From: Octopus bimaculoides
Lineage: Eukaryota
DNA: 64,000 nucleotides
NCBI RefSeq assembly: GCF_001194135.2
Contig: NC_068982.1
Coordinates: 114,051,181 to 114,115,180, forward strand
Direction of reading: 5' to 3'
Each line of letters opens with the position of its first letter. Positions within the stretch are counted from its first letter, which is position 1. Under the pieces are notes generated by a model that was given only the letters and a program-made list of their open reading frames with translations, did no database searches and had not been told where the DNA came from. Below, piece by piece: positions 9,505 through 49,433 of the stretch. The translations under genes were made by a program, and so were the position numbers.

Positions 9505-12055
9505 ACCACGCCGATTTTTAAGTATTTTATCTTATTTTCAGTGTTTCTCTCCATTTTCTCTTTTCTTCCCGATAATAATTTGTCAAACATTGACCTGACT
9601 TTCCTGCCGAACATTAGTGCAGCTGGTGACATACCTGAAGTAGTGTTGGGATTCGGTGTTATTCGGCAGACACTTAGGAATTGTGTCAATGCAGTATCAG
9701 CCAGTAGCTCATTCCTAGATTTTTTCAGCGCCCCCTTAAATGTCTCTACAAAACGTTCTGCTAGTCCATTCGATCTCGGATGGTATGGCAGAGTAAGTAA
9801 TATGCTCCATTGCATGCATTTTGCAAAAGTTCTCAAATTGCTTCGACGTGAACTGTTTCCCATTATCAGGCACTATAGCGTCTGGAACGCCATATCGCGC
9901 AAAAAGTTCGTCCAGAAATTCCATTGTTAATTTGGAGGTTGGCTTCCTCCATTTACATATTTCCGGCCACTTCATGTAACTAGCCACGCCTATTAGATAA
10001 TACCTTCCATTTAATGGTCCTGCGAAGTCTATGTGTTATCTGGACCAAAGTATGCTGGTCCTGGATCAAGGCTGAATTTTCATAGGTGGTGATCTTGTTG
10101 TCACGGTACAACCCCTGCAGGCTTTCACCAAATTTTTCAATATCCTGATCCATATTCGGCTAGTAAACGTAGCTCCCCATCACTGCTTTCATTCTCGCGA
10201 TTCCTGGATATCTCATGGAATTCTTTTAGCATACGATTTTGAAAAGAAACAGGCATTACAACCTACTGAGCGTACATAAGTACGTCATCACATATCGAAT
10301 ACCATTTCGAAACTGTGTTTTGCTCGACTACATAAGTTTTTGTATTTGCTTCTGACTTCACCATATTTTTCATTTTAATTATGAACACATCCTTCCCTGC
10401 TTTAATTTTTATTTTCTCTGAATTGACAGGTAGTTCACGTACTACGTTGCATCGTATATCTTTTATTTTGATTTCAGCTTTTAATGCCGCTATTATTGCG
10501 TCCTCTAACGGTTCATTGTACTTAGGTATCAATCTTGACATGGCAGAAATTCCATCTTAAAGTAATGATTTACTAGGATCGTCTCCTAGCGCTGTGGCTG
10601 TAGTTTTTTTCAGCCGCCAACAATGAACGTGAAGCATGAGCGATGGATTTTAGGCTACCATTTTCATACTTGTGCAAAATCACCACTCTTATACCACTTT
10701 CACTAGCATTTGATGCTACTACTATTTTAAAATTTGGATCAAAGTGTGATAATGACGCATCCAATGTAAAAACTTTTAAAATTTCTTCGAATGCTTTTTG
10801 GCACCTGTTCGACCAATACCATTTAACGTCTTTTTACAATAGGTTGTTTAGGGGTGCTCTTAGCTCATGCATATTCGGTATATATATTTGGTAATAGCTT
10901 GCGAGCCCCAAGAACGCTTGTAACGTTGTAATATTTTTCGGGGGAGAAGGCGGTGAGTTGACAGAATCGTTAGCCCTCTGGATGAAATGCTTAGCGGTAT
11001 TTCGTCTGCCGCTACGTTCTGAGTTCAAATTCCGCTGAGGTCGACTTTGCCTTTCATCCTTTCGGGGTCGATTAAATAAGTACCAGTTACGCACTGAGGT
11101 CGATATAATCGACTTAACCCGTTTGTCTGTCCTTGTTTGTCCCCCCTGTGTGTAGCCCCTTGTGGGCAGTAAAGAAATAAAAAATGTTAGCGCGCTAACG
11201 TATAATCGACTTAATCCGTTTGTCTGTTCATGTTTGTCCCCTCTGTGTGTAGCCCCTTGTGGGCAGTAAAGAAATAAGAAATGTTAGCACGTCGGGCGAA
11301 ATACTTAGCGGTATTTCGTCTGTCTTTACGTTCTGAGTTCAAATTCCGCCGAGGTCGACTTTGCTTTTCATCCTTTCGGAGTCGATAAATTAAGTACCAG
11401 TTGCGTACTGGGGTAGATCTAATTGACTGGCCCCCTCCCCAAAAATTTTGGGTCTTGTGCCTAGAGTAGAAAAGGATATTTTTCGGGGGAGGCATATTTT
11501 TTATTGCAGTCGATCTTGAAGTATGTGTCCTGCGACCATTTTTATCGATAACTTGCCCTAGATATTTTATTTCTGGCATGAAAAATTCGCATTTTTCCTC
11601 ACTAAGTTTAAATCCATATTTCCTTATTCTTTCAAAGACCTTTTTAACATGTTCCTCACGCTGGCCTCGAGACTCACTTTTTATGAGTATGTCATCCAAG
11701 TAAGCTATAGCGAAATCCATATCTGCAAGCATAGTGTCCATCACCTGTTGGAAAATACTACGTGCCACCTTTATCCCCAAAGGAAGTCGATTAAATTTAT
11801 ATAAACCTTTATGGGTGTTTACTGTTAATAATTTCGAACACTCCTCTTCGACTTATGACTGTATATATACCTCTGACAAGTCCAGGTCCAACTTTAAAAA
11901 AAATATTTCCTCCATTGAGTTTCGCAAAAATTTCCTCCGGCCTTGATAATGGGTAATTGTATGTCATGAAACGTTCGTTCAAGCCTGTTGAAAAGTCAGC
12001 GCATACTTGTATTTTTTTATTTTTCATTTTTTACATAAACAGTTGCTGACACCCA
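9505..12055 (-). mobile_element. pol: Ty3/Gypsy LTR-retrotransposon pol pseudogene (RT, RNase H, integrase), interrupted by SINEs
   Basis: Minus-strand fragments: WVSATVYVK/KIQVCADFSTGLN, MGIKVARSIFQQVMDTML...AYLDDILI (RT YLDD), FLGLASYY, DASLSHFDPN...SNASESGI...AHASRSL..AEKNYS (RNase H), MASYMKWPE...FARYGVPDAIVPDNGKQF, PYHPRSNGLAERFV (integrase). Many frameshifts and stops; no LTRs found. Confidence 0.93.
10947..11475 (+). mobile_element. Composite SINE (family A with nested alternative-tail SINE copies) inserted in Gypsy RT
   Basis: Perfect 16-bp TSD atatttttcgggggag at 10931-10946 and 11476-11491; the Gypsy peptide PPKNI is duplicated on both sides. Confidence 0.92.
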
Positions 12056-22200: not shown

Positions 22201-23439
22201 ATCCAGGTCAAATATGTTTCATAGATAGCGGAACCTCAGACGTAGTAATTATACAATTACACAAATATAAGTGTGTGTGTGTGTGTATATATGTGTGTGT
22301 GTGTGTGTACGTACGTACGTATGTATGTATGTATGTATGTATGTATGTATCAGCTGTGCTTGCTGTTGTTGTTGACGACGACGATTATGATGATTACGAC
22401 GATCTTTTTTCGAACATATTGTATCTTGGATCTCATGAAACATGTCCTGCCATTTTTAATATAATAGTGTTGCGATTTTATGCTGATTCGGCTGCTAATT
22501 TTCTAGTGGGTCGCGCAACCGTATAGAAGTTTTTTGTTGACCCGTCTATCTAAAGTCGTTGTTGCAGCTATTGGTATCGATGTTTTTATCGCTGCTGTTG
22601 TTTTTAAACACTCTATGAAAAATCTTCATAAATATTTGGAAACACATTCAGTAGTTATTTGAACGTAAACTAGAAAATGTCTCAGGACGACTGCTTATTT
22701 AATGGTGTGAAAATCTGCATCAGCTAAATGAATTCAAAGATCTAATTAACGGTGCCAACCCTCCTTGAAATGTTACTATAGAGTACAGTAATGACAAACT
22801 CACTTTTTCTCTTCTTTTTTTTTATTGGTGGTGGGTATACTAGTGATAAGAAATTAGGAATCTTTTCTGTTGCTGTCTCAGTTTTCATTTCTTTTAATTT
22901 CGTTCCAGTTGTTTCCAAATTTAGTATACTGATGTAGTTTTGAAAGTTAATTATGGAAATGAAATTCATTTTTGCCATAAATTAATAAATAAAATCTGAA
23001 TAGCTTTTTAAAGTTTTCGAATTTTGGGTAATATCAACCAATCGAAAGCCACAGACATATTAGTGCTGGTTTCCTTAGTGATACGTCAAGGTATAGCCTG
23101 CTTAAAACTCCAACCACGTGTATTGTATTTATCTATCTATTTTCTTGGACAAGTGCCTTTTTTCTGACCGTTTGTACCACGTTTTTATCTTTTACAAATG
23201 TAATTTTTGAGAAAGGAATATATTTAGTTGCAGTCCATTCACTATCACATTTTCGTCATTTTCACCTTTTATATATTTATTTTTTATGAGAAACGAACTG
23301 ATATTTCCGGTTGCTGTCCTGTCTACCTCGTTTTCATAATTTTGAACTTTGTGTTTCTCTGGACCGTTTTAACCTAAATAGAAGTATGACTGCAGCCAAC
23401 TCGATTAACCTTTCGAATATGATAGAGAAATTGAAAACC

Positions 23440-24235
23440 GTTAAGATGCGTTTCTATACTTGCAAGAGAAGGATATTATCCCTAAAAGAAAATTATGCAC
23501 AAAAGGACACTATATGAACAAGAAGATGCTTCACGGGAAAAAATTATTGTCATTACTATCAAAAAGGATGCAACGAATGTGTGTCTGCCAGAAAGGATAC
23601 ATGGTTGGAAGGTGGCACTATTCCTCTCAGGACTCTTTCACTCATGGGTCAAGGGACTGACTTCAGTCCGGTTTTGCGTTGAAGAACTGGGAATGATCCA
23701 CTGCACAACTGTTGATTACAATAGTTGCGGAGGACTGTTTCAGATAGGCTAATCTAGGAGGTTGTTAAGATAGACGAAACAGTCTTCTCAAGACGTAAAC
23801 ACAACCGAAGAAGAATGTTTGCTACCTCAGCAGTAGGTTTTCGGAGGAGTATGTCGCAAGTCCAATGCTTTTTCTTTATGCGGTGCCATGACGGAATCGC
23901 AACACACCAGAGGAATGCATACGTTAGTCACTTCTTCCAGGAACCAAAATTTTCAGTGATTTATAGAGGACTTACTCTCACATTCCTGAAATTGATGGTT
24001 AGAATTTTTGACATAGAACAGTGAACCACAGCGTTGAGGTTATTAACTCGAAAGGTGGTATCCACATGCAACGAGTGGAAAAAGTACATGGGCCTGTATA
24101 AAACGACGTAATAAACAATGTTGTGGGACCTACCGTTTTACGGTTGGCTCGTATGTCTGCGAGTTTATGTGGCGCAGAAGATATGAAAATTGTAATTTGC
24201 TTGAGGAGAAACTCATAGAGTGTATCTCAAGCTTT
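23440..24235 (+). pseudogene. Merlin (IS1595/ISXO2-like) DDE transposase remnant
   Basis: VVKIDETVFSRRKHNRRR (23761), Q*VFGGVCR, TVNHS (24018), GIHMQRVE, SYVCEFMWRRRY (24149); frameshifted; TIRs not found. Confidence 0.8.
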
Positions 24236-24659
24236 CCGTTCTGAATTTTTGATCCAAAATATGTAATAACTGTATTAATTGTTTACATGAACTGAACTGC
24301 AGTTTTTTTTTGTGTAATTTAATGTAGTTTGTATTTTTGTAATTTGTTGCAAGAAAAAAAAAATTCGAAGATTTTTCCTTTTTTTTTTTTTTTTCGTTTA
24401 CATGCCTGTCCCAACATTTCACATGATTCTATTCGTTAAAACTTATTAAAACTTCTAAACAGTTTTCAAACTATCACACACAGAATGTCAGCTTCGAAAT
24501 CCAGTTTTCTAATTGGGTAAAAATTATCAAACTTTGTAAAATTTTCTAAAATTTTTCTGGAACAAATGAATAACAAAATCAGATTCAGCTTGAAAAATTA
24601 AATCTATATACCAAATTTGAAAACTTGCACTAATTTTAAAATTTCAGAACCTGTGCCAG

Positions 24660-25060
24660 CAACAGAAAAGATTCGAAAATAAAAACTGATATATACTTTA
24701 AACATTCTGTTCCAATTTACATCGTGTGTCATCCAAGACAAACTCGAGTTACCATATCATTGTAATTTAGCGAAGCGAATATTTTCCAAGACGAATAGTC
24801 TTGACTCATCCAACAAAAGATTATAGATTAGAAGAATTGAAAGAAATATTGATAACAAAAAAAAATAATTCTTTGAATCAAATTACTAATGCAATTCAAA
24901 GAGAGAAGCAAATTGATATTCAAGAACTTCGAAAAATTAAAAGCAAATACGAAAAGAATATGATAAAACATGTCTCGACTTTTAACCCCAACAAACGTCG
25001 AAATCTTTGTAATTATTCATCAAGACATACTTAGATTACTATGAGATCATAAGATGAAAA
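24660..25060 (+). pseudogene. Penelope-like element, RT C-terminus and linker remnant
   Basis: KIKTDIYFK, CHPRQT...NLAKRIF, RLEELKEIL...AIQREKQIDIQELRK...VSTFNPN resemble PLE motifs TDIYYKPT / SCHP..T..NIP..LA.RI / ELR...VSTYNP. Confidence 0.65.
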
Positions 25061-25246
25061 AGTTATGGAAATAACAAACGATTAAAACTAATGACAAGCT
25101 AAATTTCTAAGCAGTTTTGTAACGAGTGCAAAATTTAATAAAACTAAGAATTCGAAAGAACTCCCGAGTATGTAATTATTAATTAGAAGCTCTTCTATTT
25201 CATTTCATGGAGAGATATGTTTTCAAAAACGTGTTACTTTGAAAAT

Positions 25247-25292
<46 letters not shown>

Positions 25293-25395
25293 NNNNNNNN
25301 NNNNNNNNNNNNNNNNNNNNNNNNNNNNNNNNNNNNNNNNNNNNNNNNNNNNNNNNNNNNNNNNNNNNNNNNNNNNNNNNNNNNNNNNNNNNNNN

Positions 25396-25438
<43 letters not shown>

Positions 25439-25750
25439 ATGTATATATATATAACATAAAGGTGTCAGATCTTGTTTACACGTGGTTCTAGATATTTAAG
25501 AAAGAAAAATATGTAAGAATGCACAGGAGGTTTGTATAGTAAAATATATGCAAATATTAAGATCATAATGTAACAAGGAGTTGTATTACAACAGTATATA
25601 ATAAACTGGGAGTACTGGTTTGGCGGATTACGTTTATCAAACTTCCAAGGTCTTAAATTTCTGCCATTTTTGTTATCGACAATGATTTTTCAAAAATTAT
25701 TAGCACAAATTTTGCTACACAAACCTGTGCGTTTTCACATATTTTTCTTT

Positions 25751-25798
<48 letters not shown>

Positions 25799-26482
25799 TC
25801 TATATACTTATATATACACATACATCTGTATGCATATATATATATAGATACACACATTTATATACATATATATATATACATATATACGCACGTTTATATA
25901 CACATACATACATATATATATATTTTCATAGAAAAACATGTAATCGTTACCAATATAGCAAGAGATTTCACCGCAAAAAAGTCTCAAGTAGACTCCTTAA
26001 GGATCGTTCTCCTTGGTTATATATTCAAAGTTTAAATTGAAAAGAAAATTTTGACGCTAATATCCATTATTATTGAAATTTATTCCTATGTCAACATTTC
26101 TGTATAAGGCTATATTTGACTGTCAAATTTAAGTCAAACATATAATTTGCCTTACACGTCTTCAGGGAAATAAATTTAAGAACAAACAAAAAATCAAAAA
26201 AATCAAGAACAAGAGGTAAATACCAAGACATCGTCTCTAAGTCCCGTCCATATTCAAATTTGTCGTTAAATGACTCGTTAAATAAGTTCCTTCTTAAACA
26301 AAGGTCCATTAAGGGGAGACAACCCCTCATAATTCTAACAATAATATTAATAATATTGATAAGTTATAAACAATTCTCTATTACAATGGAAATCTATACT
26401 ATATTATCTCTAGGATCTATTGTAAAAACCACAACTGTGTTTGGTAAATTATACATTGATATGGCCTGCCTTATATATGTTT

Positions 26483-26671
26483 TGTGTGTCTGTGTCTGTC
26501 CCCCCAGCATCGCTTGACAGCCGATGTTGGTGCATTTATGTCCCCCGTAACTTAGCGGTTCGGCAAGAGTGGCCGATACAATAAGTCATGGTGTCGATTT
26601 GTTCGACTAATGGTGATGCTCCAGCATGACCGCAGTGAAATGACTGAAACAAGTAAAAGAACAAAAGAATA
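26483..26671 (+). mobile_element. SINE family B, 3' half
   Basis: tgtctgtcccccagcatcgcttgacagccgatg...gtaacttagcggttcggcaa...gctccagcatgaccgcagtgaaatgactgaaacaagtaaaagaa. Confidence 0.85.
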
Positions 26672-26737
26672 TACTCACACAGCTATATCTAAACACGCAT
26701 ATATACACATCTACATATAAACAAACACATACACACA

Positions 26738-26820
<83 letters not shown>

Positions 26821-26821
26821 G

Positions 26822-26858
<37 letters not shown>

Positions 26859-27464
26859 GTATATATATATGGTCAGTGTTATTGTTCAAGTCATTGTTAC
26901 TTTGATGCGTCATGTGGTTGATATTTGCAGAGTCACTGGAGTTGTTATATGTGTCTCCATCAATTTTTGATGCATCCTGCACGCTGCCTAAGTTTTCGGT
27001 TGTTAATTCTATGAATGTGATGTTCCATAATCGATGAATTCGCATACGACTTCTTGTTTTTATCGGCAATTATTTGTCTATATTTACAAGAGTTTGCAAC
27101 TCTTATTGGAAAAGGATAATAGTAATAGAATATTGTAGTGATGCTTCATTTCCTAATCATACATGATAGCCAAAACTCGGTATCTCTAGCGGGACACGAA
27201 CCTTTATGAATAGATGTACCTGATAAGACAGACTGCAAAATTGATCCAACACAATATGTTGAAAGGAGTCCCACCCATAAGGGACAGTAGCAGGATAGTC
27301 GAAACGACCGTTGTACAAAATAAAGATTAATACCAATTCCATCTTCTCGTTACTTAAGCAATTATTATCATTATTTAAACTAACACTGTGGAATTCCTGA
27401 AATAAATCCAACACACTAATCGACATCTACGAATCAGTCCAAAAATACTATATGTATATTCTTT

Positions 27465-27770
<306 letters not shown>

Positions 27771-28156
27771 CTTTATTTAAAAACAGCAAAAATATCACAA
27801 AAACTGTTACTCAGAGTTTCACGTTCCCGTTCGTCAGACAGTTTTGTTTAGAACCATGACCTAGAAGTGACTTTATATGTAAGGGAACTGTGATTATATA
27901 AGTCGAAACAATTTGTTGGCCTCTTATGGTTTTTACAATTATTTACGTTATATAATATTATGTTATATATTATATTCATAATGTTTAATGTAATATTGTA
28001 ATATAAATAAATTATTTGATTGTCAATAGTATATCTCTACATTTAATGTATCTTTATAATTGAATTATACCAATATGTATATGGCATCCAACTGACGCAC
28101 CAGTAAAATGGATGTTTAACACACCCATTTGAAGGATTTTATTTTCCTCAGTTCGT

Positions 28157-28193
<37 letters not shown>

Positions 28194-28196
<3 letters not shown>

Positions 28197-28348
28197 GGCG
28201 GGCTTCTTCAAGGTCCATCTACCAACTCCACTCACAAGGCTTGGCTATAGTAGAAGACACTTGCCCAAGGTGCCACGCAGTGGGACTGAACCCTGAACCA
28301 TGTGGTTGGTAAGCAAGCTACTTACCATACAACCACTCCTGCGCCTAT
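28194..28348 (-). mobile_element. SINE family B, 5' half (tRNA-like head)
   Basis: gggcttc...ctcacaaggc...gacacttgcccaaggtgccacgcagtgggactgaaccc...ccactcctgcgcctat. Confidence 0.85.
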
Positions 28349-28369
28349 ATATATATATATATATAATAC

Positions 28370-28745
28370 AATAGATACGTAAGCATGTATACACACATAT
28401 ATGGACATACTTACATCTACATGTGTATATAGATGCATATTCGGGTACTGGACGTTGGAAAAATGAACTAGAGACAACGGAACGAACACATAGAAAAACA
28501 AATAGCCACTTGGATTAATTCTTCATCAGCTGCCTCTATTCTAAACTAGGCGTTTCGAACCTCTTTTTTCCCAACCAGTCGCTATGCTTGACTGCTAAAT
28601 CCACAAGTTTCTTTTTAATTTTCTCTTTGTTTATTTTCTCTTATTCCTATCTGCTGAAGGGCGTAGGTTCGAAACGTGAAAGAATTTCTCACTTTTTCGA
28701 GCGTCAAACTAATACACCTGCTTGTTGTTCATACACCTGTCTTCG
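28370..28745. mobile_element. Probable Penelope-like terminal-repeat fragment
   Basis: Two degenerate hammerhead-like cores in opposite orientation (minus CTGATGA at 28523-28529; plus CTGAAGG...GAAACG at 28654-28676). The family assignment is inference. Confidence 0.35.
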
Positions 28746-29655
28746 ACTTATATATATATNNNNNNNNNNNNNNNNNNNNNNNNNNNNNNNTATATATACA
28801 TATAATCAATTAAAATCTAGAATTGAGAAGCAAAGAGATTTAATTCTAATGGTTACAACTGTTTCGTAATTCACCCTCAATAACATTAACAACTCTGAAT
28901 CGAAAGTACATGTACAGTGTATACACTTCACATACACATTATATACATTTATGCATACATATATATGCACAAATACAATTGCATAGATACATGAAGATGC
29001 ACCAAAGAGAACTACTCTTCTGAGCGTTCCCAAACATCTCAGATTCGTCTCATTCTTTGAATTGAAAAAAAAAAACGTCGTAGAAACAAGTACCAATTCC
29101 TTGTTTAAAATATATATTCAAAAAGACAGCGCCTGATTTCGAATATCATGGAAGATAAAGCATAATTTATTTTCGCGTGGTTCCATGTTTACTATTCTTT
29201 ATACTGCCAAAATATTCAAATATGTTCTGTTTCAAATATATTCAAACAATATAAAATCTGACGGCTCGATTTGTAGAGCATAAATCCTGAATATTTCAGA
29301 AATATAAAGAGATTTAAATGTAAAACAATGAAAGAAAATAATTCTCTATGTTACATACGAAGTATTTGAAGCTGTGTATAATATTGAAGAAACCGACTTT
29401 TAAATGTGAAATTCCAAGTACGTGGAATATACTGTATATACTGTACACACAAAAACACGCACATACACACGCATATACTATACACACACATAAATACGGT
29501 GAATAATTTGGTTCTCATTTTCTGTTTTCTTCACTTTCTCAATGAAATATATGCGATAAAGTAAAAGAAATTTGTATTTTTCCCCAAAAATGTGCATACC
29601 AAGTTATACGCACCATATGCATATGTGCTATTTAAAGCACATATACATGTAGTGT

Positions 29656-29731
29656 GCCCGGCTAGCTCAGTCGGCAGAGCACGAGACTCTTAATCTCGGG
29701 GTCGTGGGTTCGTGCCCCACGTTGGGCGCCA
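29656..29731 (+). tRNA. tRNA-Lys-CTT: tRNA-Lys(CTT) with genomically encoded CCA, probably a retrocopy
   Basis: 73-nt cloverleaf GCCCGGC...GTTGGGCG with anticodon CTT; differs from the canonical animal tRNA-Lys-CTT at 20 (C), 27/43 (compensatory C-G) and 58 (T). Followed by CCA, with no oligo-T terminator. Confidence 0.92.
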
Positions 29732-29736
29732 GAAAG

Positions 29737-30002
29737 GGAGGCGCAATGGCCCAGTGGTTAGGGCAGCGGACTCGCGGTCATAGGATCGTGGTTTCGATTC
29801 CCAGACCGGGCGTTGTGATTGTTTATTGAGCGAAAACACCTAAAGCTCCACAAGGCTCCGGCAGGGGAAGGTGGTGAACCCTGCTGTACTCTTTCACCAC
29901 AACTTTCTCTCACTCTTACTTCCTGTTTCTGTTGTGCCTGTAATTCAAAGGGTCAGCCTTGTCACACTGTGTCACGCTGAATATCCCGAGAACTACGTTA
30001 AG
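29737..30002 (+). mobile_element. tRNA-derived SINE family C, 3' end lost in gap
   Basis: A box tggcccagtgg, B-box-like ggtttcgattccc, then a non-tRNA body; runs into N gap at 30003. Confidence 0.8.
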
Positions 30003-30932
30003 NNNNNNNNNNNNNNNNNNNNNNNNNNNNNNNNNNNNNNNNNNNNNNNNNNNNNNNNNNNNNNNNNNNNNNNNNNNNNNNNNNNNNNNNNNNNNNNNNN
30101 NNNNNNNNNNNNNNNNNNNNNNNNNNNNNNNNNNNNNNNNNNNNNNNNNNNNNNNNNNNNNNNNNNNNNNNNNNNNNNNNNNNNNNNNNNNNNNNNNNNN
30201 NNNNNNNNNNNNNNNNNNNNNNNNNNNNNNNNNNNNNNNNNNNNNNNNNNNNNNNNNNNNNNNNNNNNNNNNNNNNNNNNNNNNNNNNNNNNNNNNNNNN
30301 NNNNNNNNNNNNNNNNNNNNNNNNNNNNNNNNNNNNNNNNNNNNNNNNNNNNNNNNNNNNNNNNNNNNNNNNNNNNNNNNNNNNNNNNNNNNNNNNNNNN
30401 NNNNNNNNNNNNNNNNNNNNNNNNNNNNNNNNNNNNNNNNNNNNNNNNNNNNNNNNNNNNNNNNNNNNNNNNNNNNNNNNNNNNNNNNNNNNNNNNNNNN
30501 NNNNNNNNNNNNNNNNNNNNNNNNNNNNNNNNNNNNNNNNNNNNNNNNNNNNNNNNNNNNNNNNNNNNNNNNNNNNNNNNNNNNNNNNNNNNNNNNNNNN
30601 NNNNNNNNNNNNNNNNNNNNNNNNNNNNNNNNNNNNNNNNNNNNNNNNNNNNNNNNNNNNNNNNNNNNNNNNNNNNNNNNNNNNNNNNNNNNNNNNNNNN
30701 NNNNNNNNNNNNNNNNNNNNNNNNNNNNNNNNNNNNNNNNNNNNNNNNNNNNNNNNNNNNNNNNNNNNNNNNNNNNNNNNNNNNNNNNNNNNNNNNNNNN
30801 NNNNNNNNNNNNNNNNNNNNNNNNNNNNNNNNNNNNNNNNNNNNNNNNNNNNNNNNNNNNNNNNNNNNNNNNNNNNNNNNNNNNNNNNNNNNNNNNNNNN
30901 NNNNNNNNNNNNNNNNNNNNNNNNNNNNNNNN

Positions 30933-31014: not shown

Positions 31015-31299
31015 TTATATTTATATCAAGAAAAATTCATCCCAAATGACAAAATAGTTCGTAACAAAATACTTCTTAAGATTCTCATTTCATCTCCCAA
31101 AATAATATCAGTAGACTTGGGTCAACAAAGCAAGGTCAGAATATCTAATTTTACAATTACATTCTGTTATTTTGAATATTTATAGAACATAATCTCTGAC
31201 CCCAGAGGATATCTCAACGATACACAACTTATAAATTCAGTAACTGCCTCAGCCACTAAATCTCCTTTTCTTTTTATACATATACTACCTGTGCACGTT

Positions 31300-32019: not shown

Positions 32020-32192
32020 TGTGTGTGTGTGTGTGTGTGTGTGTGTTTATGTTTGTCCCCCCCCCTTCCCGATATTGGTGTGTTTACTAGGATTACAAAG
32101 AATAAATCCTGGGGTTGATTTGTTCGACTAAAGGCGGTGCTCCAGCATAGCCGCAGTGAAATGACTGAAACAAATAAAAGAATAAAAGAATA
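32020..32192 (+). mobile_element. SINE family B, 3' half, internally deleted
   Basis: (TG)n then tttgtccccccc...tcctggggttgatttgttcgactaaaggcggtgctccagcat...gactgaaacaaataaaagaataaaagaata. Confidence 0.85.
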
Positions 32193-32683
32193 TAGAAAAG
32201 TATTTAGTTATAAGGGGATGATGATACGGAAATAAATATAATTCCACAAATGCAAACACTTTGAAGTAAACTAGATAATCTATCCACTGATATAATATTT
32301 TAATTGTAGATTAAGTCATTCATAAGATTTATATTTGTTTGGGGAAAAATATACCAGTGATGATTTACGGTGACAGCAATTTGCTTATTGGAGATCTTTG
32401 GAAGATTCCTATACGTTCAGTTACCATGCGGAGGGAATAATTTAATTTTTGGTTATTGTCTTTTGTCTGGGTGTAAGGAGGAGAGAGAAAGTGGTGTTAC
32501 TCAACCAGTTAGCTTCGTTGTTGTTTTTTTTTGTGTGTGTATGAGCGAAGGCGTGGATGTGTAATTAACAATTTCAGTAAGAATTGCTCTTACAGATATC
32601 CAATATTATAATTGAGCAACATAAGGCAGCGAGCTGACAGAATCGCTAACACGCCGGACGAAATGCCTAGCGGTATTTCGTCT

Positions 32684-34382
32684 CTGTGGAGTTATTGCAT
32701 GAGTTTATGTTGAAATATTTATCGAATTGTTGCCATTGTTATTAATTTGAATTGTTGTTAGAACTGTTGCTGTTGTCAATTTGTTAATTGTTGGGTTTTT
32801 TTTTTCCATTGTGGGAAAATGGAGAAGATGCTGGAGGGAGGCCCAAGTTATGCGGCCGCAACGAGTAGAGGAGTAGACGTGCAAGAGTTGGAGGTCCGCG
32901 AGATAAAGGTGGAGCCTAGAAAGATGAAGAAGAGTGAAAAATTAATCACTAAGGAAGGTAATATTCTGAAGCTAACACCACCTGAAGATTTATTGGCCAT
33001 GTGTTAAAAAGAACGGTAACATTTGAAAACATGAAGACAGCCACAAGAAAAATAGAGATTGCGCCGATAGAAACCATAGAGGAGTGTATGAAGGAGTTGA
33101 AAAGATTTACAACATACATTACGAGAGGGAGAAAATACACCACTGTGGAAGTGCGCTTTACAACGGAGGAGGAAGCAATAAAGCACTCCACAGAGGTTAT
33201 AAGGTCAGAAGAATAGATGCTCCTGTCTTCGTACTGCGGCAAACGTGTGGCCAAAGTGCGAGTAGGTAAGGTTTCACCCGAATTAAAGGAAGAATGGCTG
33301 AAGACAGCAATAATATATAATATGAAGGATGGGAAGATTTTGATGGCTACCAGGACCCAGGAAGTAAACTACTGGGGATATGGTATTAAATTGACAATAC
33401 AGGCAACTACGGAGGATTTGAACAGTGTGGTGGATGAGATTGTGTTGTCAGAAGATGTAAGATTGAGAGTCGGTGTAGAGGGAAGGCCGCCGATATGTTT
33501 CACATGTGGAGAGAGGGGCTACATGAAGGCGTGGTGCGCCCAAAGAGAACAACAAGCAGAACAGGTGGAGAGAAAGGAGAGTATGGACCGGGTCATGGTA
33601 ACAGAAAAAGAAACAGAGAATGGATTTACTATGGTTAAAAAGAAAAGAAGGAGGAGCGGAGGAATGAGTTCTCCGCCAGAGAAGCAGAAAAAGAAGAAAG
33701 AAGAGGTGAGAAAAGAAACTGTGATGGAGGTCAGTAAGATTCGGAAATACAACTGTAGGAAGGAGAGTTGGAGTGATTATTTAGGATAGAGGGAGGAAAA
33801 ACAGAACAAAAAGTACAAGATAAAGGCAAGCAGATACGAGGAGGAGATGGAGTTTGGTATTATGTGACATACCCAAAGAATGTTGAAACCGAAAAAAAGA
33901 TAAGTTTCATTCAATAGTAAGAGTGAAGGTGCCTTCATACGTCTACGTAGAGGATATGAAGGCAATACTGATTGAAGAAGAGAACTACAGAAGGTTGAAA
34001 GAGATGTGTGGAGATAGCGTTGACCCACCAGGAGTGGAGGTAGAATTCAAGGAGTTGCCACCAGTAGTGAATATAAGAGATATTGAACCACTGATGAAGT
34101 TCTACTAAAAGAGGAAAAATAATGTATGTTAAATGATATTAATTTTAGGAAAATAATGGTGATAAAGTAGTAAAAAAAAAAGAACAATTGTAGATAGTAC
34201 ATATAATGGTTCAAATGGTACCGTATGGGAGTGGGGCCTGTGTGGCCATTTTCATTTTTTTTTCATTATTATATAATTTCATCCCATTTACATTAGTTTT
34301 ATGTTTTTTGTCCCCACTGTGGTCTTGTCTGTACTGGTGGTGTCCGCATCTGTGTTTAGGGCTTTATGCCTAATAAAGAAAT
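32684..34382 (+). mobile_element. ORF1-only (no ORF2) L1/Tx1-like non-LTR element
   Basis: Perfect 13-bp TSD cggtatttcgtct (32671-32683; 34383-34395). Has a TTG-rich 5' leader, disrupted ORF1 and ~270-bp 3' UTR ending aataaagaaat; no endonuclease or RT sequence. Confidence 0.85.
32819..34108 (+). pseudogene. Disrupted gag-like ORF1 (RRM-like region plus CCHC zinc knuckle)
   Basis: MEKMLEGGPSYAAA..., KVRVGKVSPELKEEWL, VEGRPPICFTCGERGYMKAWC (C-x2-C-x4-[H>Y]-x4-C), basic KKKRRR tail, C-terminal ...EPLMKFY*. A frameshift near 33000, a stop at 33214 and further breaks after 33789. Confidence 0.8.
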
Positions 34383-36039
34383 CGGTATTTCGTCTGTCGC
34401 TACGTTCTAAGTTCAAATTCCGCCGAGGTCAACTTTGTCTTTCATCATTTCGGGGTCGATAAATTAAATATCGGTCAAGTACTGGGGTCGATATGATCAA
34501 CTCACCTCCTCACCCAAAATTTCAGGCTTGTGCTACAGTAGAAAGGATCATAACTGAACAACAACAATTTCGCCAAAAGGGCTTCTAACTGAATGCTGAA
34601 TACGAAATAAGATTTTTCCTATTAAACTTAGTTTTCTTCTAGCGATATGTTAATTTATCTTTACCACATTAGCATATTCACCTGATAAAAATGAATTATT
34701 ATAATTAAAGACTTTAATATTAATATGTATGCTGTATTAATTTTTATGTCAAATTAGTATGATGTATTGCTTTAGGACGAGAGTTCTGACAATGCTGGGA
34801 TAAATTTGATTATCTTGGCAAACTGCGATGTTTGAACAACGTTTAAACCTGCTTATACATGAGCCCAGTGTCTCTGTGTGGAGCAGTTTCGCGTCAGTCT
34901 GCTTGTAAATAATACATTGTATACAAGCAAATGTATATTGCTCCTTGGTTTAATATCAGTGATATGTTTATCCAGATGTTTTGTCATACTACGGAACTGT
35001 GTCACTCATCCTAATTCCTTTCATTAATCTTTTAAATCCCAGAGAAGCAACTTTTCACCATTAGTAGAAAAAGAAAATGCTTCAAATTTTAATTCAAATG
35101 TAAACTTGGCAATCAAAAACATGAGTGTGGTTTTTCATATTCGTTGTATAACTTGTTAACAGGATGGCTAAACATGTTAACATGACTTGTTAACAGGATG
35201 GCTAAATGGTTCAAATCACAAGTCATGTGTTATTCGAAAGGAACCCGAAAAATAACATATCACGGTTATTTCTAACGTGAGAGTACTAAAGAGAATACTT
35301 CAAAAACAAAGAGCTTGAATAAATCAAATTCCTTCCGGTCTCAACCTCCAGTAGCTAATCATCCTGAGCTTTGAGTAACGAGGAATATGAGCTGGACCTT
35401 ATGTTCCAAATAAAAAGATAAAAACAAATAAAAAAGATAGAAACATTTTTGTCCTAACTTAATAGGCTCCCTGCTCCTTCATTGAAACATTACTGTCAAA
35501 AAAGATCTGAATGATATTTTTTCGTGACATGAATTTAATTGAGGAACAGACTGAACATTACGATTTTAGAATCTTCTAAAATATGATTCAGATTTAGTAT
35601 TTCCCATAACTGCCATGCAGAATGGCTCTTCCATGAAGATAGATTATTGCTAAGTAAAATTGTGAATTCACACATGCGGCTCTTGGTCATAAAAATAACG
35701 TGGATAAAAGTCAATAGTTCACCGGGATTTGAAAAGTTAACCTGAAAGAAGTTCTTCATATTGGAAATATATTCCGTTCCATACCTGTAACACATATTTC
35801 AACTCTGAGAGAGGGATATGACGACATGTACTTGCCTTTAGAAAAAGGTTCAGTATCAGAAATATACGTGGAACATCTGTGCATATCTGAAGGTTATAGC
35901 AATTTTGATATGATTGTAGTAAGATTATGCTAGGTACTATCACTTTTTATGCGAGATACTTCGGACAGGCAAAACCATAACCGTTAATAGAATTCTCTTA
36001 AATAAACGTCACTTGTTCCAGGTAAAATCAAAATCGATT

Positions 36040-40873: not shown

Positions 40874-40950
<77 letters not shown>

Positions 40951-41547
40951 ATATATGTATGTATGTANNNNNNNNNNNNNNNNNNNNNNNNNNNNNNNNN
41001 NNNNNNNNNNNNNNNNNNNNNNNNNNNNNNNNNNNNNNNNNNNNNNNNNNNNNNNNNNNNNNNNNNNNNNNNNNNNNNNNNNNNNNNNNNNNNNNNNNNN
41101 NNNNNNNNNNNNNNNNNNNNNNNNNNNNNNNNNNNNNNNNNNNNNNNNNNNNNNNNNNNNNNNNNNNNNNNNNNNNNNNNNNNNNNNNNNNNNNNNNNNN
41201 NNNNNNNNNNNNNNNNNNNNNNNNNNNNNNNNNNNNNNNNNNNNNNNNNNNNNNNNNNNNNNNNNNNNNNNNNNNNNNNNNNNNNNNNNNNNNNNNNNNN
41301 NNNNNNNNNNNNNNNNNNNNNNNNNNNNNNNNNNNNNNNNNNNNNNNNNNNNNNNNNNNNNNNNNNNNNNNNNNNNNNNNNNNNNNNNNNNNNNNNNNNN
41401 NNNNNNNNNNNNNNNNNNNNNNNNNNNNNNNNNNNNNNNNNNNNNNNNNNNNNNNNNNNNNNNNNNNNNNNNNNNNNNNNNNNNNNNNNNNNNNNNNNNN
41501 NNNNNNNNNNNNNNNNNNNNNNNNNNNNNNNNNNNNNNNNNNNNNNA

Positions 41548-42547
41548 AAACAGCTTAAATGTTTGGTGTATCAAGAAGTAGTCTCGAAAGTAACGACAGC
41601 CTTTGTGAAAGAGGGAAAAACCTCCTCGTCGAAACAAAACTCCGGAAGAAAACCAGATATTTCCGATAGAGACCATCGAACTGTTACGCGAATTGTTAGA
41701 AAAGATCACAAAAGTACAGCTCCCAAAATTACTGCAGAGCTTAATGACCGCCTCGAGAACCCAGTTTCCACAAAAACTGTTCGCCGGGAGCTGCACAAAG
41801 CCAGATTTCACCGGAGGACTGCAATCAGAAAACCACTACTTTCAAAAACAAACGTTGCAAAGCGTTTAGAGTGGAGTAAAAACCTGTAGAATTGGTCCCT
41901 AGAGCAGTGGAAGAATGTTATTTTCTCGGATGAGTCGTCCTTTACCTTATTTCCGACAACTGATCGAGTATACGTGTGAAAGCATTTGACCCAGACTGCC
42001 TTCTTCCAACTGTTAAACATGGAGGAGGATCTGTGATGATCTGGGGGACTATATCTTGGAAATCTGCTGGCCCAATGGGTTCCCTTCATCGCAGAAGTAA
42101 TAGTCAAGACTATTTGCGCATTTTATCTGATCAAATTCATCCTATGGTTTCGGAAATGTTTCAGGGAAGAAACGCAACCTTTCAGGATGATAATGCACCA
42201 GTTCACACAGCTAAAGTTGTTACTTAATGGCACGAGGAACATTCTAGTGAAGTTGAACATCTTATCTGGCCACAACAGTCCCCAGATCTCAATATTATCG
42301 AACATTTATGATACATTCTAGAAAAACAAGTAAGGAGTTGATATCCTCCACCATCATCACTACAAGAACTGGAGACTGTTTTAACTGTAAAATGGAAAAA
42401 AAATTCCTTTGGAAACAATTCAAACTTTGCACGAGTCCATACCTTGTAGAATTCAAGCTGTAATTACTTCCAAAGGCGGTCCTACCCTATATTAAAATAA
42501 ATTTGTTTGAAATTTTAAGGTGTTTCCATTATTTTGTCCAACCCCTG
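41548..42547 (+). mobile_element. Tc1-family transposon (DD36E spacing), decayed, left end in gap
   Basis: SGRKP..., VIFSDESSF, VKHGGGSVMIWG, FQDDNAPVH...WPQQSPDLNIIE with 36 codons between D and E. Right TIR ggtgtttccattattttgtccaacccctg ends 42547, followed by TA. Confidence 0.93.
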
Positions 42548-42562
42548 TATATGTATATATAT

Positions 42563-42706
42563 ATACAACGGGCTTCTTTCAGTTTCCGGCAAATCCATGC
42601 ACAAGGCTTTAGTTGGTCTGGGGCTATAGTAGAAGACATTTACCCAAGGTGTCACGCAGTGGGACTGAACTCGGAACTATGTGACTGAGAAGCAAACTTA
42701 CCACAC
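42563..42706 (-). mobile_element. SINE family B, 5' half
   Basis: gggcttctttcagtttcc...ggctatagtagaagacatttacccaaggtgtcacgcagtgggactgaactcggaac. Confidence 0.8.
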
Positions 42707-43154
42707 ATTTACGTCAAAGTCCCACCGGTGTTGAATTTACTTTTCTATGTTCTAAGGTTTTGGAAATAGTTATCGGTCAGAAACTAGTTAAAACAGAGAT
42801 TGTATAAACTATAGTTCATTTATTATTTTTTAGTAGTCTATTGCGAATTCGAGGAGTGAAATGTTTTAAACAACACAATTGTTAATATATTAAGTTTCGT
42901 TAATCTAGTTAAGAAACTATATTATAAGCAAAGATGAATTGTACAGGATTAAGCAAAAGTAATAAGATTAGTGTTTATAAAAACATTCTCCATGGTCTTT
43001 GGATAGACAGATCAAACTGATTCTCTCTATTACTTTTTTCCCCATTGTAACCTATTTACCAAATGTACTGTCTTACATGTGATCTATGAAAGAAAAACAT
43101 TATTTTTTTGTCGAAAAATGATTGTTTAAAAATATATTAGTTAATAGGAACAAG

Positions 43155-46975: not shown

Positions 46976-49433
46976 TTCTTTTGNNNNNNNNNNAGAAGAA
47001 TTCTTTTGGTCGTAAAATGCAAGTGAACACATGAACATATAAATTTCTCGTAGACTAACTCTGATATTTTTCAACACCATACTATATAGGAATACAAAAG
47101 AGATTTCAAGCTCACTTACACACAAGCACTCAGTGTATCTGTGAGTGTACATATAAGTAATATATGTAAGTGTGTGTGAGTGTGTATGTACATACATACA
47201 TGTATATACAGACATACACACACATACATACACACACATACATACACACATTTTGTGAGAAGTCATGGTAGGTACTACTATCGTATATGTCACTCTTGAT
47301 ATATTAGCACTTCTATCTTTGGTTCAAGAGTATTTGAATATATTTATCAGCTGCTGATATATTATCGGAAATCTATCATAAATTTTAATTAATTATCTCT
47401 GTAAGAAAATACTTTACGAGTTTACAATCGTATAGTTTCTCGCTTAGCACTTAACATCTATTCGGGAGAATTTACATCATGGTCGAATAATGAATACCAA
47501 CAAGATAAACTAATTGGATCATGATCTAACGAGCACCTATGTGGTAGCTTGAGCTGCGCGACATAACAAACAATATCCTTCAAATCATACGTAACTATTT
47601 TTAAAAAGTGTGTGCGTGTGTGTGTGTCTTTGTACGTGCATATGTGTGTGTGTGTCCATTGTTAAGTTATCCTGAGAAGTGCTCAATAGAAATGTAGAGT
47701 ACAATAGTTTAATCAGGCCGGCCTAATCTCTCACTCTGGAATTAAAAGTCACGAGAATAGGCCATGTATATTAATATATATATATATATATATANNNNNN
47801 NNNNNNNNNNNNNNNNNNNNNNNNNNNNNNNNNNNNNNNNNNNNNNNNNNNNNNNNNNNNNNNNNNNNNNNNNNNNNNNNNNNNNNNNNNNNNNNNNNNN
47901 NNNNNNNNNNNNNNNNNNNNNNNNNNNNNNNNNNNNNNNNNNNNNNNNNNNNNNNNNNNNNNNNNNNNNNNNNNNNNNNNNNNNNNNNNNNNNNNNNNNN
48001 NNNNNNNNNNNNNNNNNNNNNNNNNNNNNNNNNNNNNNNNNNNNNNNNNNNNNNNNNNNNNNNNNNNNNNNNNNNNNNNNNNNNNNNNNNNNNNNNNNNN
48101 NNNNNNNNNNNNNNNNNNNNNNNNNNNNNNNNNNNNNNNNNNNNNNNNNNNNNNNNNNNNNNNNNNNNNNNNNNNNNNNNNNNNNNNNNNNNNNNNNNNN
48201 NNNNNNNNNNNNNNNNNNNNNNNNNNNNNNNNNNNNNNNNNNNNNNNNNNNNNNNNNNNNNNNNNNNNNNNNNNNNNNNNNNNNNNNNNNNNNNNNNNNN
48301 NNNNNNNTTGTATGATCGTGTATAGAGGAATATATTATTTTATTTAAAAGCGTTCCAACTCTGTCTGTTTTTTATGTTTTATTTATATTCTTGTAAAATT
48401 AATGTGGGATATAGAATATGAAATATATAATATAATATATAATATAAAAATGGATGGTACAATGAAATGAAGTATTGAATGTCATATTGAATATATGAAA
48501 TATTGAGTGTTCAATATAAAGGATTAAATATATAAAGGTATATATATATGTATATATATATGTATACATATATGTGTGTATATATGCATACATATATGTG
48601 TACATATATATGTGTATATATATATATATACATATAAATATACACACACATACATATATATATTCACATATACGTGTATGCATACGCACGCACAAACATA
48701 CGTACATATATACTCATATATATATACACACATACACGCATATACACACATACACACACATACGTACATGTGTGTGTGTCAGTGTGCGTCTGTATGTGTG
48801 TGCGTGTGTGTATGACAATTGACTGTCACATGTCCTATTGAGAATATTCCATAGAGACAAATGCTGCTATAGTACATCGTCTAAGAATTCAAGTTACTTC
48901 CAATGCATTGATGCGATCTTAATCACACGCGAATCATTAATGTAGCACTTGTACATTACAGCTACCCAATTAGAGTAATTGTATGAGTTGTATAAATCTA
49001 TTTTACAGACACACAAATGCAAGCATATGTGTTGACACATTACGGAAATGAAATGAAAAAACAAAAAAAGTTTTCTTCAATAGTTGCCTACACTCTTTGA
49101 TTGACAAAATTCAAATTCCTTCGTAAAAGTAGCTGCTGCTATTTTATTTCAAAGTCCACTGACTTTTATATGATTAATTTATGTATCATTAATTCAAAAT
49201 GTGCTTTGTTTCTAAAGAATTATTAATTTATTCCTCTAGTTGCTCAGTTGCAACGTTTTTCTTTATGTTAATTTAATTTTGGTTCTAAGAAGCGCTGACA
49301 ATAAAATAATAATTCTTGACTATTAAACAGCAAATATTGTCATTTGATGAGAAACATAACGAAAACAAAAGAAAACAATTCGCAATGATGCGGATATGAA
49401 TGCAAAGGAAAAACGAAAAAAAAAGAAAAGAAC

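What the first reader, a model, noticed from the sequence alone, without database searches (positions are those of the whole stretch)
29656..30002. Mature tRNA-Lys retrocopy (CCA, T at 58, C at 20) fused to the 5' end of a SINE
Seen: a complete tRNA-Lys(CTT) followed by CCA (29729-29731), a 5-nt spacer, then a same-strand SINE-C head; there is no T-run terminator. Besides a compensated C27-G43 pair, the only changes from the canonical sequence are A58>T (29713) and T20>C. Known: eukaryotic tRNA genes normally do not encode CCA. Position 58 is m1A and 20 is commonly dihydrouridine, and m1A causes RT misincorporation. Template-switch chimeras such as U6-L1 put the second RNA 5' of the first. Inference: a LINE RT copied the SINE RNA, jumped to the CCA end of a mature modified tRNA and read through it, leaving a genomic record of tRNA modifications. 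The chimera has two tandem Pol III promoters and could found a dimeric SINE.
Basis: partly seen in the sequence, partly recalled or inferred. Interest (0 to 1): 0.8.

Follow-up and report, generated by a model that had tools for sequence, protein, structure and literature searches.

The report
Processed tRNA-Lys copy joined to SINE
In an octopus genome window, a DNA copy of a finished lysine tRNA (with its added CCA tail and a change at a normally methylated base) sits directly in front of a short mobile element; this probably records a reverse transcriptase jumping between two RNAs, a known process of which this is a clean but unproven single example.

Summary
A complete tRNA-Lys(CTT) lies at 29656-29728, CCA follows at 29729-29731, there is no T4 run up to the gap at 30003, and a Pol III-type box A/box B head follows in the same orientation.

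Two genuine tRNA-Lys genes from other genomes (L001, L002) have the same C27-G43 pair. One of them also has C20. Both have A58, lack CCA and end in a T5 terminator. So A58>T is the only change private to this copy. The claim that T20>C is a modification footprint is not supported.

A scan of metagenome contigs found 46 CCA-bearing copies of the tRNA-Lys 3' end:
- 13 are real genes with a chance CCA followed by a T-run.
- 23 look like primer-binding sites of LTR retrotransposons, extended by read-through into the primer tRNA.
- 3 carry T at position 58, and none carries G or C.

None of the gene or LTR hallmarks is present in the window.

The best reading is a reverse-transcribed mature tRNA fused to a SINE RNA by template switching. 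The gap hides the 3' end and any target-site duplication, the SINE 5' end is undefined, and no second copy was found. This would be a new member of a known kind, of moderate interest.

The parts
29656..29728 (+). Full-length tRNA-Lys(CTT) body, 73 nt, positions 1-73 in standard numbering
   Evidence: ARAGORN. Rfam RF00005 at 58.5 bits, model positions 1-71 of 71. Differs from genuine genes L001 and L002 only at positions 36/58 and 20/58 respectively.
29713..29713 (+). T at tRNA position 58 (A in genuine genes). It is the only change private to this copy and falls within box B
   Evidence: Direct comparison. The Rfam score is 58.5 bits, against 62.3-65.1 for genuine genes with A58. m1A causes RT misincorporation, and in the m1A-G context the C signal is low (PMC4787781).
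29675..29675 (+). C at tRNA position 20. Probably an encoded isodecoder feature, not a modification footprint
   Evidence: The same C20 with C27-G43 occurs in the terminator-bearing gene L001. C20 with C27 occurs in L047.
29729..29731 (+). CCA directly after discriminator base G73
   Evidence: Sequence. ARAGORN includes it in the gene call. Genuine genes L001 and L002 have TAC or ATA here, followed by T5.
29732..29739 (+). Junction GAAAGGGA. It may be untemplated nucleotides, the SINE 5' leader, or both; the assignment is open
   Evidence: It lies between CCA and the point 7 nt upstream of box A where a tRNA-like +1 would fall. No SINE consensus could be obtained.
29740..29815 (+). tRNA-like SINE head with box A at 29747-29757 and a box-B-like motif at 29791-29801
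   Evidence: The only strict box A in the window, paired with a box-B-like motif. It folds better than shuffles, z = -2.2. It gives no RF00005 match at E<=10.
29816..30002 (+). SINE body, cut off by the assembly gap
   Evidence: The translated frame 29844-30002 matches one Octopus bimaculoides UniRef protein, A0A0L8H1P9 (P0003), at 90-93% identity over about 40 residues, so the sequence is repeated elsewhere.
30003..30932 (.). Assembly gap (930 N) hiding the SINE 3' part, its tail and any target-site duplication
   Evidence: N-run list. No convincing TSD beyond the gap.

Best explanation
The segment 29656-29731 is a DNA copy of a mature, CCA-tailed and modified tRNA-Lys(CTT). It is not a tRNA gene. 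It was most likely made in the same retrotransposition event as the SINE that follows it. In this reading, a LINE-encoded reverse transcriptase primed at the target site and copied a SINE RNA to its 5' end. It may have added a few untemplated nucleotides (part of GAAAGGGA). It then switched to the 3' CCA end of a tRNA-Lys and copied it to nucleotide 1. While passing m1A58 it inserted A, which reads as T on the sense strand.

Shown: the tRNA, the CCA, T58, the absence of a terminator, and the same-sense box A/box B head that follows.

Inferred: that position 58 was methylated, that a LINE reverse transcriptase did the copying, and that one event made both parts.

C20 and C27-G43 were probably already in the source tRNA gene.
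For: 1. The tRNA is complete and CCA follows directly.
2. Genuine genes of the same isodecoder type (L001, L002) lack CCA, have T5 within 3-5 nt and carry A58. The window copy differs from them only at 58, apart from the anticodon base in L001 and position 20 in L002.
3. No T4 run occurs in the 274 nt after the tRNA.
4. Position 58 is a major RT-signature site in tRNA sequencing, and m1A gives misincorporation with T among the products (PMC5066629; PMC4787781).
5. Among 46 CCA-bearing tRNA-Lys copies in metagenome contigs, the only non-A base at 58 is T (3 loci). One of these, L041, lies inside a Gypsy-type LTR element where RT copying of the primer tRNA is certain.
6. The order tRNA-CCA-sense SINE is what a template switch at the SINE RNA 5' end predicts. 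It is the opposite of what tRNA priming predicts (inference from the TPRT model; a SINE-to-tRNA switch is proposed for PittSINE in PMC5729268).
7. CCA ends 15 nt before box A, within the range where SINE transcripts start (plus general knowledge of SINE 5' ends).
8. The LTR hallmarks are absent: no TGT after CCA, no second copy of the adjacent sequence, and no gag/pol domains in 23000-29655.
Against: 1. There is no target-site duplication, because the 3' end lies in the 930-N gap. One event cannot be told from two.
2. The SINE 5' end is undefined. No other copy was found in the window or in any collection reachable here.
3. The argument from position 58 rests on one base. In the comparative set, 3 of 33 non-gene copies changed at 58, against about 3.5% per site at positions 30-50, which is not a significant excess.
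4. Genomic CCA does occur in real tRNA-Lys genes (13 loci).
5. The 10 nt upstream of the tRNA match the 5' flank of the genuine gene L002 at 8 of 10 positions (CATGTAGTGT against CGTGCAGTGT). This hints at a gene-type flank, although a 100-nt alignment is not significant (71 of 500 shuffles) and the L002 organism is unknown.
6. The species' own Lys-CTT genes could not be examined.
Confidence: 0.5

Rival explanations
1. Two independent events. A processed (tailless) tRNA-Lys retrocopy and a SINE landed next to each other, in either order, without any template switch.
For: The marks of a processed tRNA (CCA, T58, no terminator) hold equally well here. No TSD is visible to tie the two parts together. 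The 8-nt junction could be leftover target sequence.
Against: It needs two rare insertions within 0-8 nt of each other, in the same orientation, with the SINE apparently full length at the junction. A single switch explains all of this. No other copy of either element lies nearby.
Confidence: 0.15
2. This locus is a copy of an already amplified composite (dimeric) repeat family, tRNA-Lys-CCA plus SINE. The template switch, if any, happened at the founder locus and not here.
For: This cannot be excluded, because no octopus genome could be searched. tRNA-Lys-related SINEs are described in octopus and squid (Ohshima and Okada 1994, cited in PMC4824008). That those heads include CCA is my recollection, not checked here.
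Against: The tRNA part is identical to a genuine isodecoder except at position 58, so any such family would be very young. There is no second copy in 64 kb. No protein-level trace of the junction exists in about 15 billion predicted proteins, although octopus is barely represented there. The A58>T change damages box B of the left unit.
Confidence: 0.12
3. A genuine tRNA-Lys gene, now a pseudogene, whose next three bases happen to be CCA. It picked up an A58>T point mutation and had a SINE inserted a few bases downstream, which displaced its terminator.
For: Real genes with encoded CCA exist (13 loci, all with a T-run). The 5' flank matches L002's flank at 8 of 10 positions and has T at -1, as real genes do. 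A TATTTAAA motif lies at -27 to -20 (sequence).
Against: It needs three independent coincidences. CCA has a chance of about 0.01 at this base composition. The single mutation must fall on the near-invariant A58 and be A>T, about 1 in 219. A same-sense SINE 5' end must lie within 8 nt. No T-rich remnant of a terminator lies between CCA and the SINE or just beyond the gap.
Confidence: 0.1
4. Remnant of an LTR retrotransposon on the minus strand. Its primer-binding site was extended to the whole primer tRNA by read-through past m1A58 during plus-strand strong-stop synthesis. The 'SINE' would then be the antisense LTR end.
For: This is the commonest origin of CCA-bearing non-gene tRNA-Lys copies in the comparative set (23 of 33). 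It includes a full-length T58 case inside a Gypsy-type element (L041).
Against: No TGT (the LTR ...ACA end) lies within 0-4 nt of CCA; the first TG is 15 nt away. No second copy of the adjacent sequence occurs anywhere in the window. No gag/pol domains occur in the 6.6 kb on the internal side. The adjacent sequence carries sense-strand Pol III boxes.
Confidence: 0.05
5. Assembly chimera. Short-read assembly joined a tRNA-Lys copy to a SINE from another locus.
For: The contig piece ends in a gap 270 nt further on, and the assembly has 11 N runs in 64 kb. Both parts are repeated sequence classes.
Against: The two parts share no sequence through which an assembler could cross over. The private T58 lies 15 nt from the CCA, so reads or k-mers covering T58-CCA-GAAAG-SINE head must exist.
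Confidence: 0.03

Closest known systems
LINE-mediated template-switch chimeric retrocopies (U6/L1, 5S/L1, U3/L1; tRNA/L1 chimeras reported in 2025, bioRxiv 10.1101/2025.02.02.635956)
   Same: A small Pol III RNA lies 5' of a retroelement RNA in the same insertion. The small RNA is copied from its true 3' end.
   Different: Here the 3' partner is a SINE, not a LINE. The mammalian tRNA/L1 chimeras are mostly half tRNAs in antisense orientation, attributed to twin priming, whereas this one is a full-length sense tRNA with CCA. A TSD is shown there and is not visible here.
SINE head replacement or dimerisation by template switching (PittSINE from TguSINE1 plus tRNA-Asp, PMC5729268; 5S-tRNA composite SINEs, PMC4824008)
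   Same: The same proposed step: the reverse transcriptase leaves a SINE RNA and continues on a tRNA, placing a new Pol III head in front.
   Different: Those cases were inferred after the fact from amplified families, with the old head lost. Here the whole old SINE head is kept, the tRNA keeps its CCA, and only one locus is known.
Processed tRNA retropseudogenes, including tailless retropseudogenes (Schmitz et al. 2004; cited in PMC3747384; the paper itself was not readable here)
   Same: A DNA copy of a processed tRNA, without gene flanks or a terminator.
   Different: Those are described for mammals and are often truncated. They stand alone and are not fused to a SINE.
LTR-retrotransposon primer-binding sites extended by read-through of the primer tRNA past m1A58 (seen here in L041 and about 22 other loci)
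   Same: Sense tRNA-Lys plus CCA, copied by a reverse transcriptase, sometimes with T at position 58.
   Different: In those, the CCA is followed within 0-4 nt by TGT (the antisense LTR end) and the elements carry pol genes. The window has neither.
tRNA-Lys-related SINEs of cephalopods (squid SK, octopus OK; Ohshima et al. 1993, Ohshima and Okada 1994) and the 'strong-stop DNA' model
   Same: A tRNA-Lys-like head in a cephalopod repeat. By my recollection a CCA follows the tRNA-like part.
   Different: Those heads are diverged consensus sequences of old families. This tRNA is essentially identical to a living isodecoder and is followed by a second, unrelated tRNA-like head. I could not obtain the OK consensus to compare.

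Membership tests
Processed (mature) tRNA retrocopy | 3' CCA directly after the discriminator base, not followed by a gene-type trailer or T-run | tested here: met
   CCA is at 29729-29731 and no T4 run occurs up to 30002. Genuine genes L001 and L002 have no CCA and have T5.
Processed (mature) tRNA retrocopy | Copy starts at mature nucleotide 1, with no gene-type 5' leader or flank | tested here: inconclusive
   The Rfam match starts at G1. However, the 10 nt upstream match L002's flank at 8 of 10 positions. A 100-nt alignment is not significant (71 of 500 shuffles).
Processed (mature) tRNA retrocopy | Substitution at a base whose modification blocks Watson-Crick pairing (m1A58) | tested here: met
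   A58>T is the only private change. It is a single site, and the comparative enrichment is not significant (3 of 33).
Processed (mature) tRNA retrocopy | Target-site duplication around the insert | not testable with these tools
   The 3' end is in the N gap 30003-30932.
LINE template-switch chimera (U6/L1 type) | Two RNA-derived parts in the same orientation, with the second template 5' of the first | tested here: met
   Sense tRNA, CCA, then a sense box A/box B head.
LINE template-switch chimera (U6/L1 type) | Junction joins the true 3' end of the 5' RNA to the true 5' end of the 3' RNA, give or take a few untemplated nucleotides | tested here: inconclusive
   The tRNA 3' end is exact (CCA). 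The SINE 5' end is unknown, and only its plausible range 29732-29740 can be given.
LINE template-switch chimera (U6/L1 type) | One TSD enclosing the whole chimera, and a LINE-type 3' tail | not testable with these tools
   The gap hides the 3' end.
Bona fide Pol III tRNA gene | Cloverleaf with the invariant T54-A58 pair | tested here: not met
   T is at position 58. The score is 58.5 bits, against 62.3-65.1 for genuine genes.
Bona fide Pol III tRNA gene | T-run terminator within a few nucleotides downstream | tested here: not met
   No T4 run occurs in 274 nt.
LTR-retrotransposon primer-binding site with tRNA read-through | LTR terminus (TGT on the tRNA-sense strand) within 0-4 nt of CCA | tested here: not met
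   CCA is followed by GAAAGGGAGGCGCAATGG. By contrast, 23 comparison loci have the TGT.
LTR-retrotransposon primer-binding site with tRNA read-through | Second LTR copy and gag/pol on the internal side | tested here: not met
   No second copy was found. No Pfam retroelement domains occur in 23000-29655.
tRNA-derived SINE (the 3' part) | Internal Pol III promoter: box A and box B at tRNA-like spacing | tested here: met
   Box A is at 29747-29757 and a box-B-like motif at 29791-29801. This is the only such pair in 64 kb.
tRNA-derived SINE (the 3' part) | Interspersed, multicopy | tested here: inconclusive
   One other copy is inferred from an O. bimaculoides protein. None is in the window. That this is an abundant octopus SINE is my recollection only.
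tRNA-derived SINE (the 3' part) | LINE-related 3' tail | not testable with these tools
   The tail lies in the gap.
Dimeric or composite SINE family | Several copies sharing both units and the same junction | not testable with these tools
   No octopus genome could be searched. No junction-spanning hit appeared in the protein or contig collections.

The most novel reading that the evidence does not exclude
The locus is a freshly formed, still single-copy tRNA-Lys plus SINE dimer, caught just after a LINE reverse transcriptase switched from a SINE RNA to a mature tRNA. That would make it a direct example of the step by which SINEs are thought to gain new heads or become dimeric. The T at position 58 would be a germline record of m1A58 on an octopus tRNA, written by a LINE enzyme.
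Probability: 0.4. Interest if true: 0.55.

Novelty: new member of a known kind. Interest (0 to 1): 0.4.

Why it matters
Template switching from a SINE or LINE RNA to a tRNA is the standard explanation for how SINE heads arise, are exchanged or become dimeric. It is usually inferred long afterwards from diverged families. A near-pristine locus that keeps the CCA tail, the full old head and a position-58 change would show the intermediate itself. It would also suggest that retrocopies can be mined for tRNA modification footprints in animals where tRNA sequencing has not been done. Two practical lessons follow from the comparison set. CCA after a tRNA is not enough to call a retrocopy. And most CCA-bearing tRNA-Lys copies belong to LTR elements.

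Tried and rejected
1. Other copies of the SINE or tRNA in the window. blastn at two stringencies and a 3-mismatch pattern search found nothing but the locus itself.

2. Other octopus copies through predicted proteins. A junction-spanning sense peptide found only two genuine tRNA-Lys gene ORFs from other organisms. The antisense junction peptide found nothing. The SINE-body peptide found one O. bimaculoides UniRef protein that is on no contig on record. Twenty-one window ORFs are absent from the collection, so neither the locus nor an ortholog could be fetched.

3. Collection scans for the SINE body gave 0 hits in viral contigs, 0 in metagenome contigs and 0 in genome contigs.

4. TSD search beyond the gap gave only low-complexity matches. 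A 13-of-15 match (29628-29642 against 31177-31191) is not adjacent to the insert boundary.

5. Position-58 enrichment among CCA-bearing copies is suggestive, since all three changes are A>T, but it is not significant.

6. tRNA-primed cDNA (strong-stop-like) origin is rejected, because it predicts an antisense SINE after the CCA.

7. RtcB-type RNA ligation, as for U6/L1 (PMC6789731), is unlikely, because a CCA-3'OH end is not a substrate. This is from general knowledge.

8. The organisms of L001 and L002 could not be identified.

9. Schmitz et al. 2004 (PMC524414) was not readable.

Full report
**What is in the sequence.** ARAGORN finds a single tRNA in the 64-kb window, tRNA-Lys(CTT) at 29656-29731 with the CCA included. 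Rfam's tRNA model matches 29656-29728 over its whole length at 58.5 bits and is the only family above threshold in the window. All sub-threshold Rfam hits are microRNA models matching (CA/TA)n microsatellites. Read directly, the tRNA is followed by CCA (29729-29731), then GAAAGGGA, then GGCGCAATGGCCCAGTGGTTAGGG and onward. Because tRNA plus CCA is 76 nt, linear and standard numbering coincide. Position 58 (29713) is T and position 20 (29675) is C. No run of four T occurs between 29656 and the N gap that starts at 30003.

**Context.** The window is a gap-ridden, microsatellite-rich animal assembly with 11 N runs. The translated repeat after the tRNA matches one UniRef protein of Octopus bimaculoides at 90-93% identity. 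The window is therefore octopus or a close relative, and the sequence after the tRNA is repeated at least once elsewhere. That sequence carries the only strict box A (TGGCCCAGTGG, 29747-29757) in the window. A box-B-like GTTTCGATTCC at 29791-29801 follows after 33 nt, which is tRNA-like spacing. It is too diverged to match the tRNA model even at E<=10. I accept it as a tRNA-type SINE head plus body. My memory that it is an abundant octopus SINE could not be checked. There is no second copy in the window.

**Which differences are real.** A junction-spanning peptide search happened to return two ORFs lying over genuine tRNA-Lys genes in other genomes, and I fetched their DNA. L002 reads ...GGGCG ATAACTTTTT and L001 reads ...GGGCG TACTTTTT. 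Both lack CCA, both have a T5 terminator within 3-5 nt, both have A58, and both have the C27-G43 pair. L001 also has C20.
- The window tRNA differs from L001 only at positions 36 and 58.
- It differs from L002 only at positions 20 and 58.
- A CCA-bearing copy from a metagenome (L047) also combines C20, C27 and T58.

So C20 and C27-G43 are most simply features of an encoded isodecoder, and A58>T is the one private change.

**How diagnostic are CCA and T58?** I scanned JGI metagenome contigs for the conserved 3' end of tRNA-Lys(CTT) followed by CCA, leaving position 58 free. This returned 46 loci, evidently from eukaryotic DNA, which fall into three groups.
- Thirteen are full-length genes in which the CCA is followed at once by a T-run, for example CCA TTATTTTCTCTTTT. 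They share flanks and all have A58. Encoded CCA therefore does occur in ordinary genes.
- Twenty-three have CCA followed within 0-4 nt by TGT. This is the antisense image of an LTR end (...ACA) next to a primer-binding site. Here the site extends far beyond the usual 18 nt, often over most or all of the tRNA.
- Ten fit neither pattern.

L041 confirms the second group. On the opposite strand it has RT-RNase H and integrase zinc-binding domains in the expected order. Its 'primer-binding site' is a complete tRNA-Lys complement with T at position 58.

At position 58 the 46 loci show 43 A, 3 T and no G or C. The rate in non-gene copies (3 of 33) is not significantly above the roughly 3.5% per site seen at positions 30-50. 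The exclusive A>T direction fits published m1A signatures, in which the m1A-G context gives a low C signal (PMC4787781) and position 58 is a major signature site (PMC5066629). None of the 46 loci has a box A/box B head after the CCA.

**Applying this to the window.**
- The gene reading needs three coincidences: a chance CCA (about 0.01 at this base composition), a single mutation that happens to hit near-invariant A58 as A>T, and a same-sense SINE 5' end within 8 nt that leaves no trace of a terminator. I rate it at about 0.1.
- The LTR reading fails each test. There is no TGT near the CCA. There is no second copy of the adjacent sequence in 64 kb. No retroelement domains occur in the 6.6 kb on the would-be internal side. 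The adjacent sequence has sense-strand Pol III boxes.
- tRNA priming of cDNA synthesis predicts an antisense SINE after the CCA, which is not what is seen.

What remains is a reverse-transcribed mature tRNA lying 5' of a sense SINE. This is the geometry expected if a LINE reverse transcriptase reached the 5' end of a SINE RNA during target-primed reverse transcription and continued on the CCA end of a tRNA. The CCA ends 15 nt before box A, within the range where SINE transcripts begin, so the junction is compatible with a full-length SINE RNA plus 0-8 extra nucleotides.

**What is not shown.** The SINE runs into a 930-N gap, so its tail and any target-site duplication are invisible. Nothing convincing lies beyond the gap. 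A single event therefore cannot be separated from two adjacent insertions, or from this locus being a copy of an already amplified dimer. The SINE 5' end is undefined. The species' own Lys-CTT genes could not be examined, because every route to octopus DNA failed. One caveat points the other way. The 10 nt before the tRNA match the flank of the genuine gene L002 at 8 of 10 positions, although a 100-nt alignment is not significant and T at -1 is common to real genes generally. Finally, A58>T alters the tRNA's own box B (GGTTCGAGCCC to GGTTCGTGCCC). The 'two tandem promoters, could found a dimeric SINE' idea is thus weaker than stated.

**Comparison with known systems.** Template-switch chimeras (U6/L1 and relatives) and processed tRNA pseudogenes are established. 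tRNA/L1 chimeras in mammals were reported in 2025, but they are mostly antisense half tRNAs attributed to twin priming. A SINE-to-tRNA switch has been proposed to explain PittSINE and the 5S-tRNA composite SINEs. I found no report in the searchable library of a full-length, CCA-tailed sense tRNA fused to a complete SINE, or of position-58 footprints in genomic retrocopies. That library is incomplete.

**Verdict.** That the tRNA is a reverse-transcribed mature tRNA is well supported, at about 0.8. That it was fused to the SINE in one template-switch event is the best reading but is unproven, at about 0.5. It is a new member of a known kind and of moderate interest.

Noticed in passing
window 29610-29655: A 46-nt near-perfect hairpin or palindrome (GCACCATATGCATATGTGC...GCACATATACATGTAGTGT) ends exactly at the base before tRNA nucleotide 1. 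Its folding energy is -20.3 kcal/mol, z = -4.0, and 0 of 200 shuffles fold as well. It may only reflect the CA/TA-rich low-complexity DNA common in this window, or it may mark a fragile insertion site.
   Followed up: partly
L041 6491-6566 (also L003, L005, L010, L011, L013, L018, L021, L030, L035, L043, L047 and others): Many metagenome-derived animal contigs carry LTR retrotransposons whose tRNA-Lys primer-binding site extends to most or all of the tRNA, well beyond the usual 18 nt. This implies read-through past m1A58 during plus-strand strong-stop synthesis. L041 has pol domains and T at position 58.
   Followed up: partly
L007, L008, L012, L014, L016, L023, L024, L026, L029, L031, L033, L046: A multicopy family of apparently genuine tRNA-Lys(CTT) genes with a genomically encoded CCA followed at once by a T-run (CCA TTATTTTCTCTTTTGATTAGACA). 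The copies share flanks. This shows that encoded CCA can spread with a eukaryotic tRNA gene family.
   Followed up: no
L001 3016-3088: A tRNA identical to the Lys(CTT) isodecoder except that its anticodon is CTA (it would read the UAG stop codon). It has a normal T5 terminator and lies on a 2.66-Mb ENA contig of unknown organism. ARAGORN labels it 'Pyl'.
   Followed up: no
L036 around 987-1012: A 3' tRNA-Lys fragment (position 40 to CCA) with T at position 58 is embedded in an (AAT)n microsatellite. About 35-nt direct repeats lie on either side. Its origin is unclear.
   Followed up: no
window 29628-29642 and 31177-31191: A 13-of-15 match (TATTTAAAGCACATA against TATTTATAGAACATA) links the 5' flank and sequence 245 nt beyond the gap. 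7 of 300 shuffles score as well. It is not adjacent to the insert boundary, so it is not a proper TSD and is probably AT-rich chance.
   Followed up: partly
window 9474-11780 (-), 33217-33789 (+), about 41550-41889 (+): Other mobile-element remnants are present. ORFs at 9474-9863 and 11211-11780 look like LTR-retrotransposon pol, with a weak rve_3 hit and a YLDD motif. A 190-aa ORF at 33217-33789 has a zinc knuckle (CFTCGERGYMKAWC). An ORF at about 41550-41889 looks like a Tc1-type transposase.
   Followed up: no
window 27478-28350, 55081-55635, 42548-42707, 26481-26669, 32085-32194; also 8727-8948, 10947-11483, 34383-34551: At least two other interspersed repeat families have 3-6 copies each at 75-93% identity. 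None resembles the element at 29732-30002.
   Followed up: no
window, many sites (for example 8307-8377, 40879-40958, 47177-47247): More than 120 sub-threshold Rfam hits to mir-297, mir-466, mir-3149 and mir-1277 models all fall on (CA)n/(TA)n microsatellite hairpins. They are artefacts of low-complexity sequence.
   Followed up: yes
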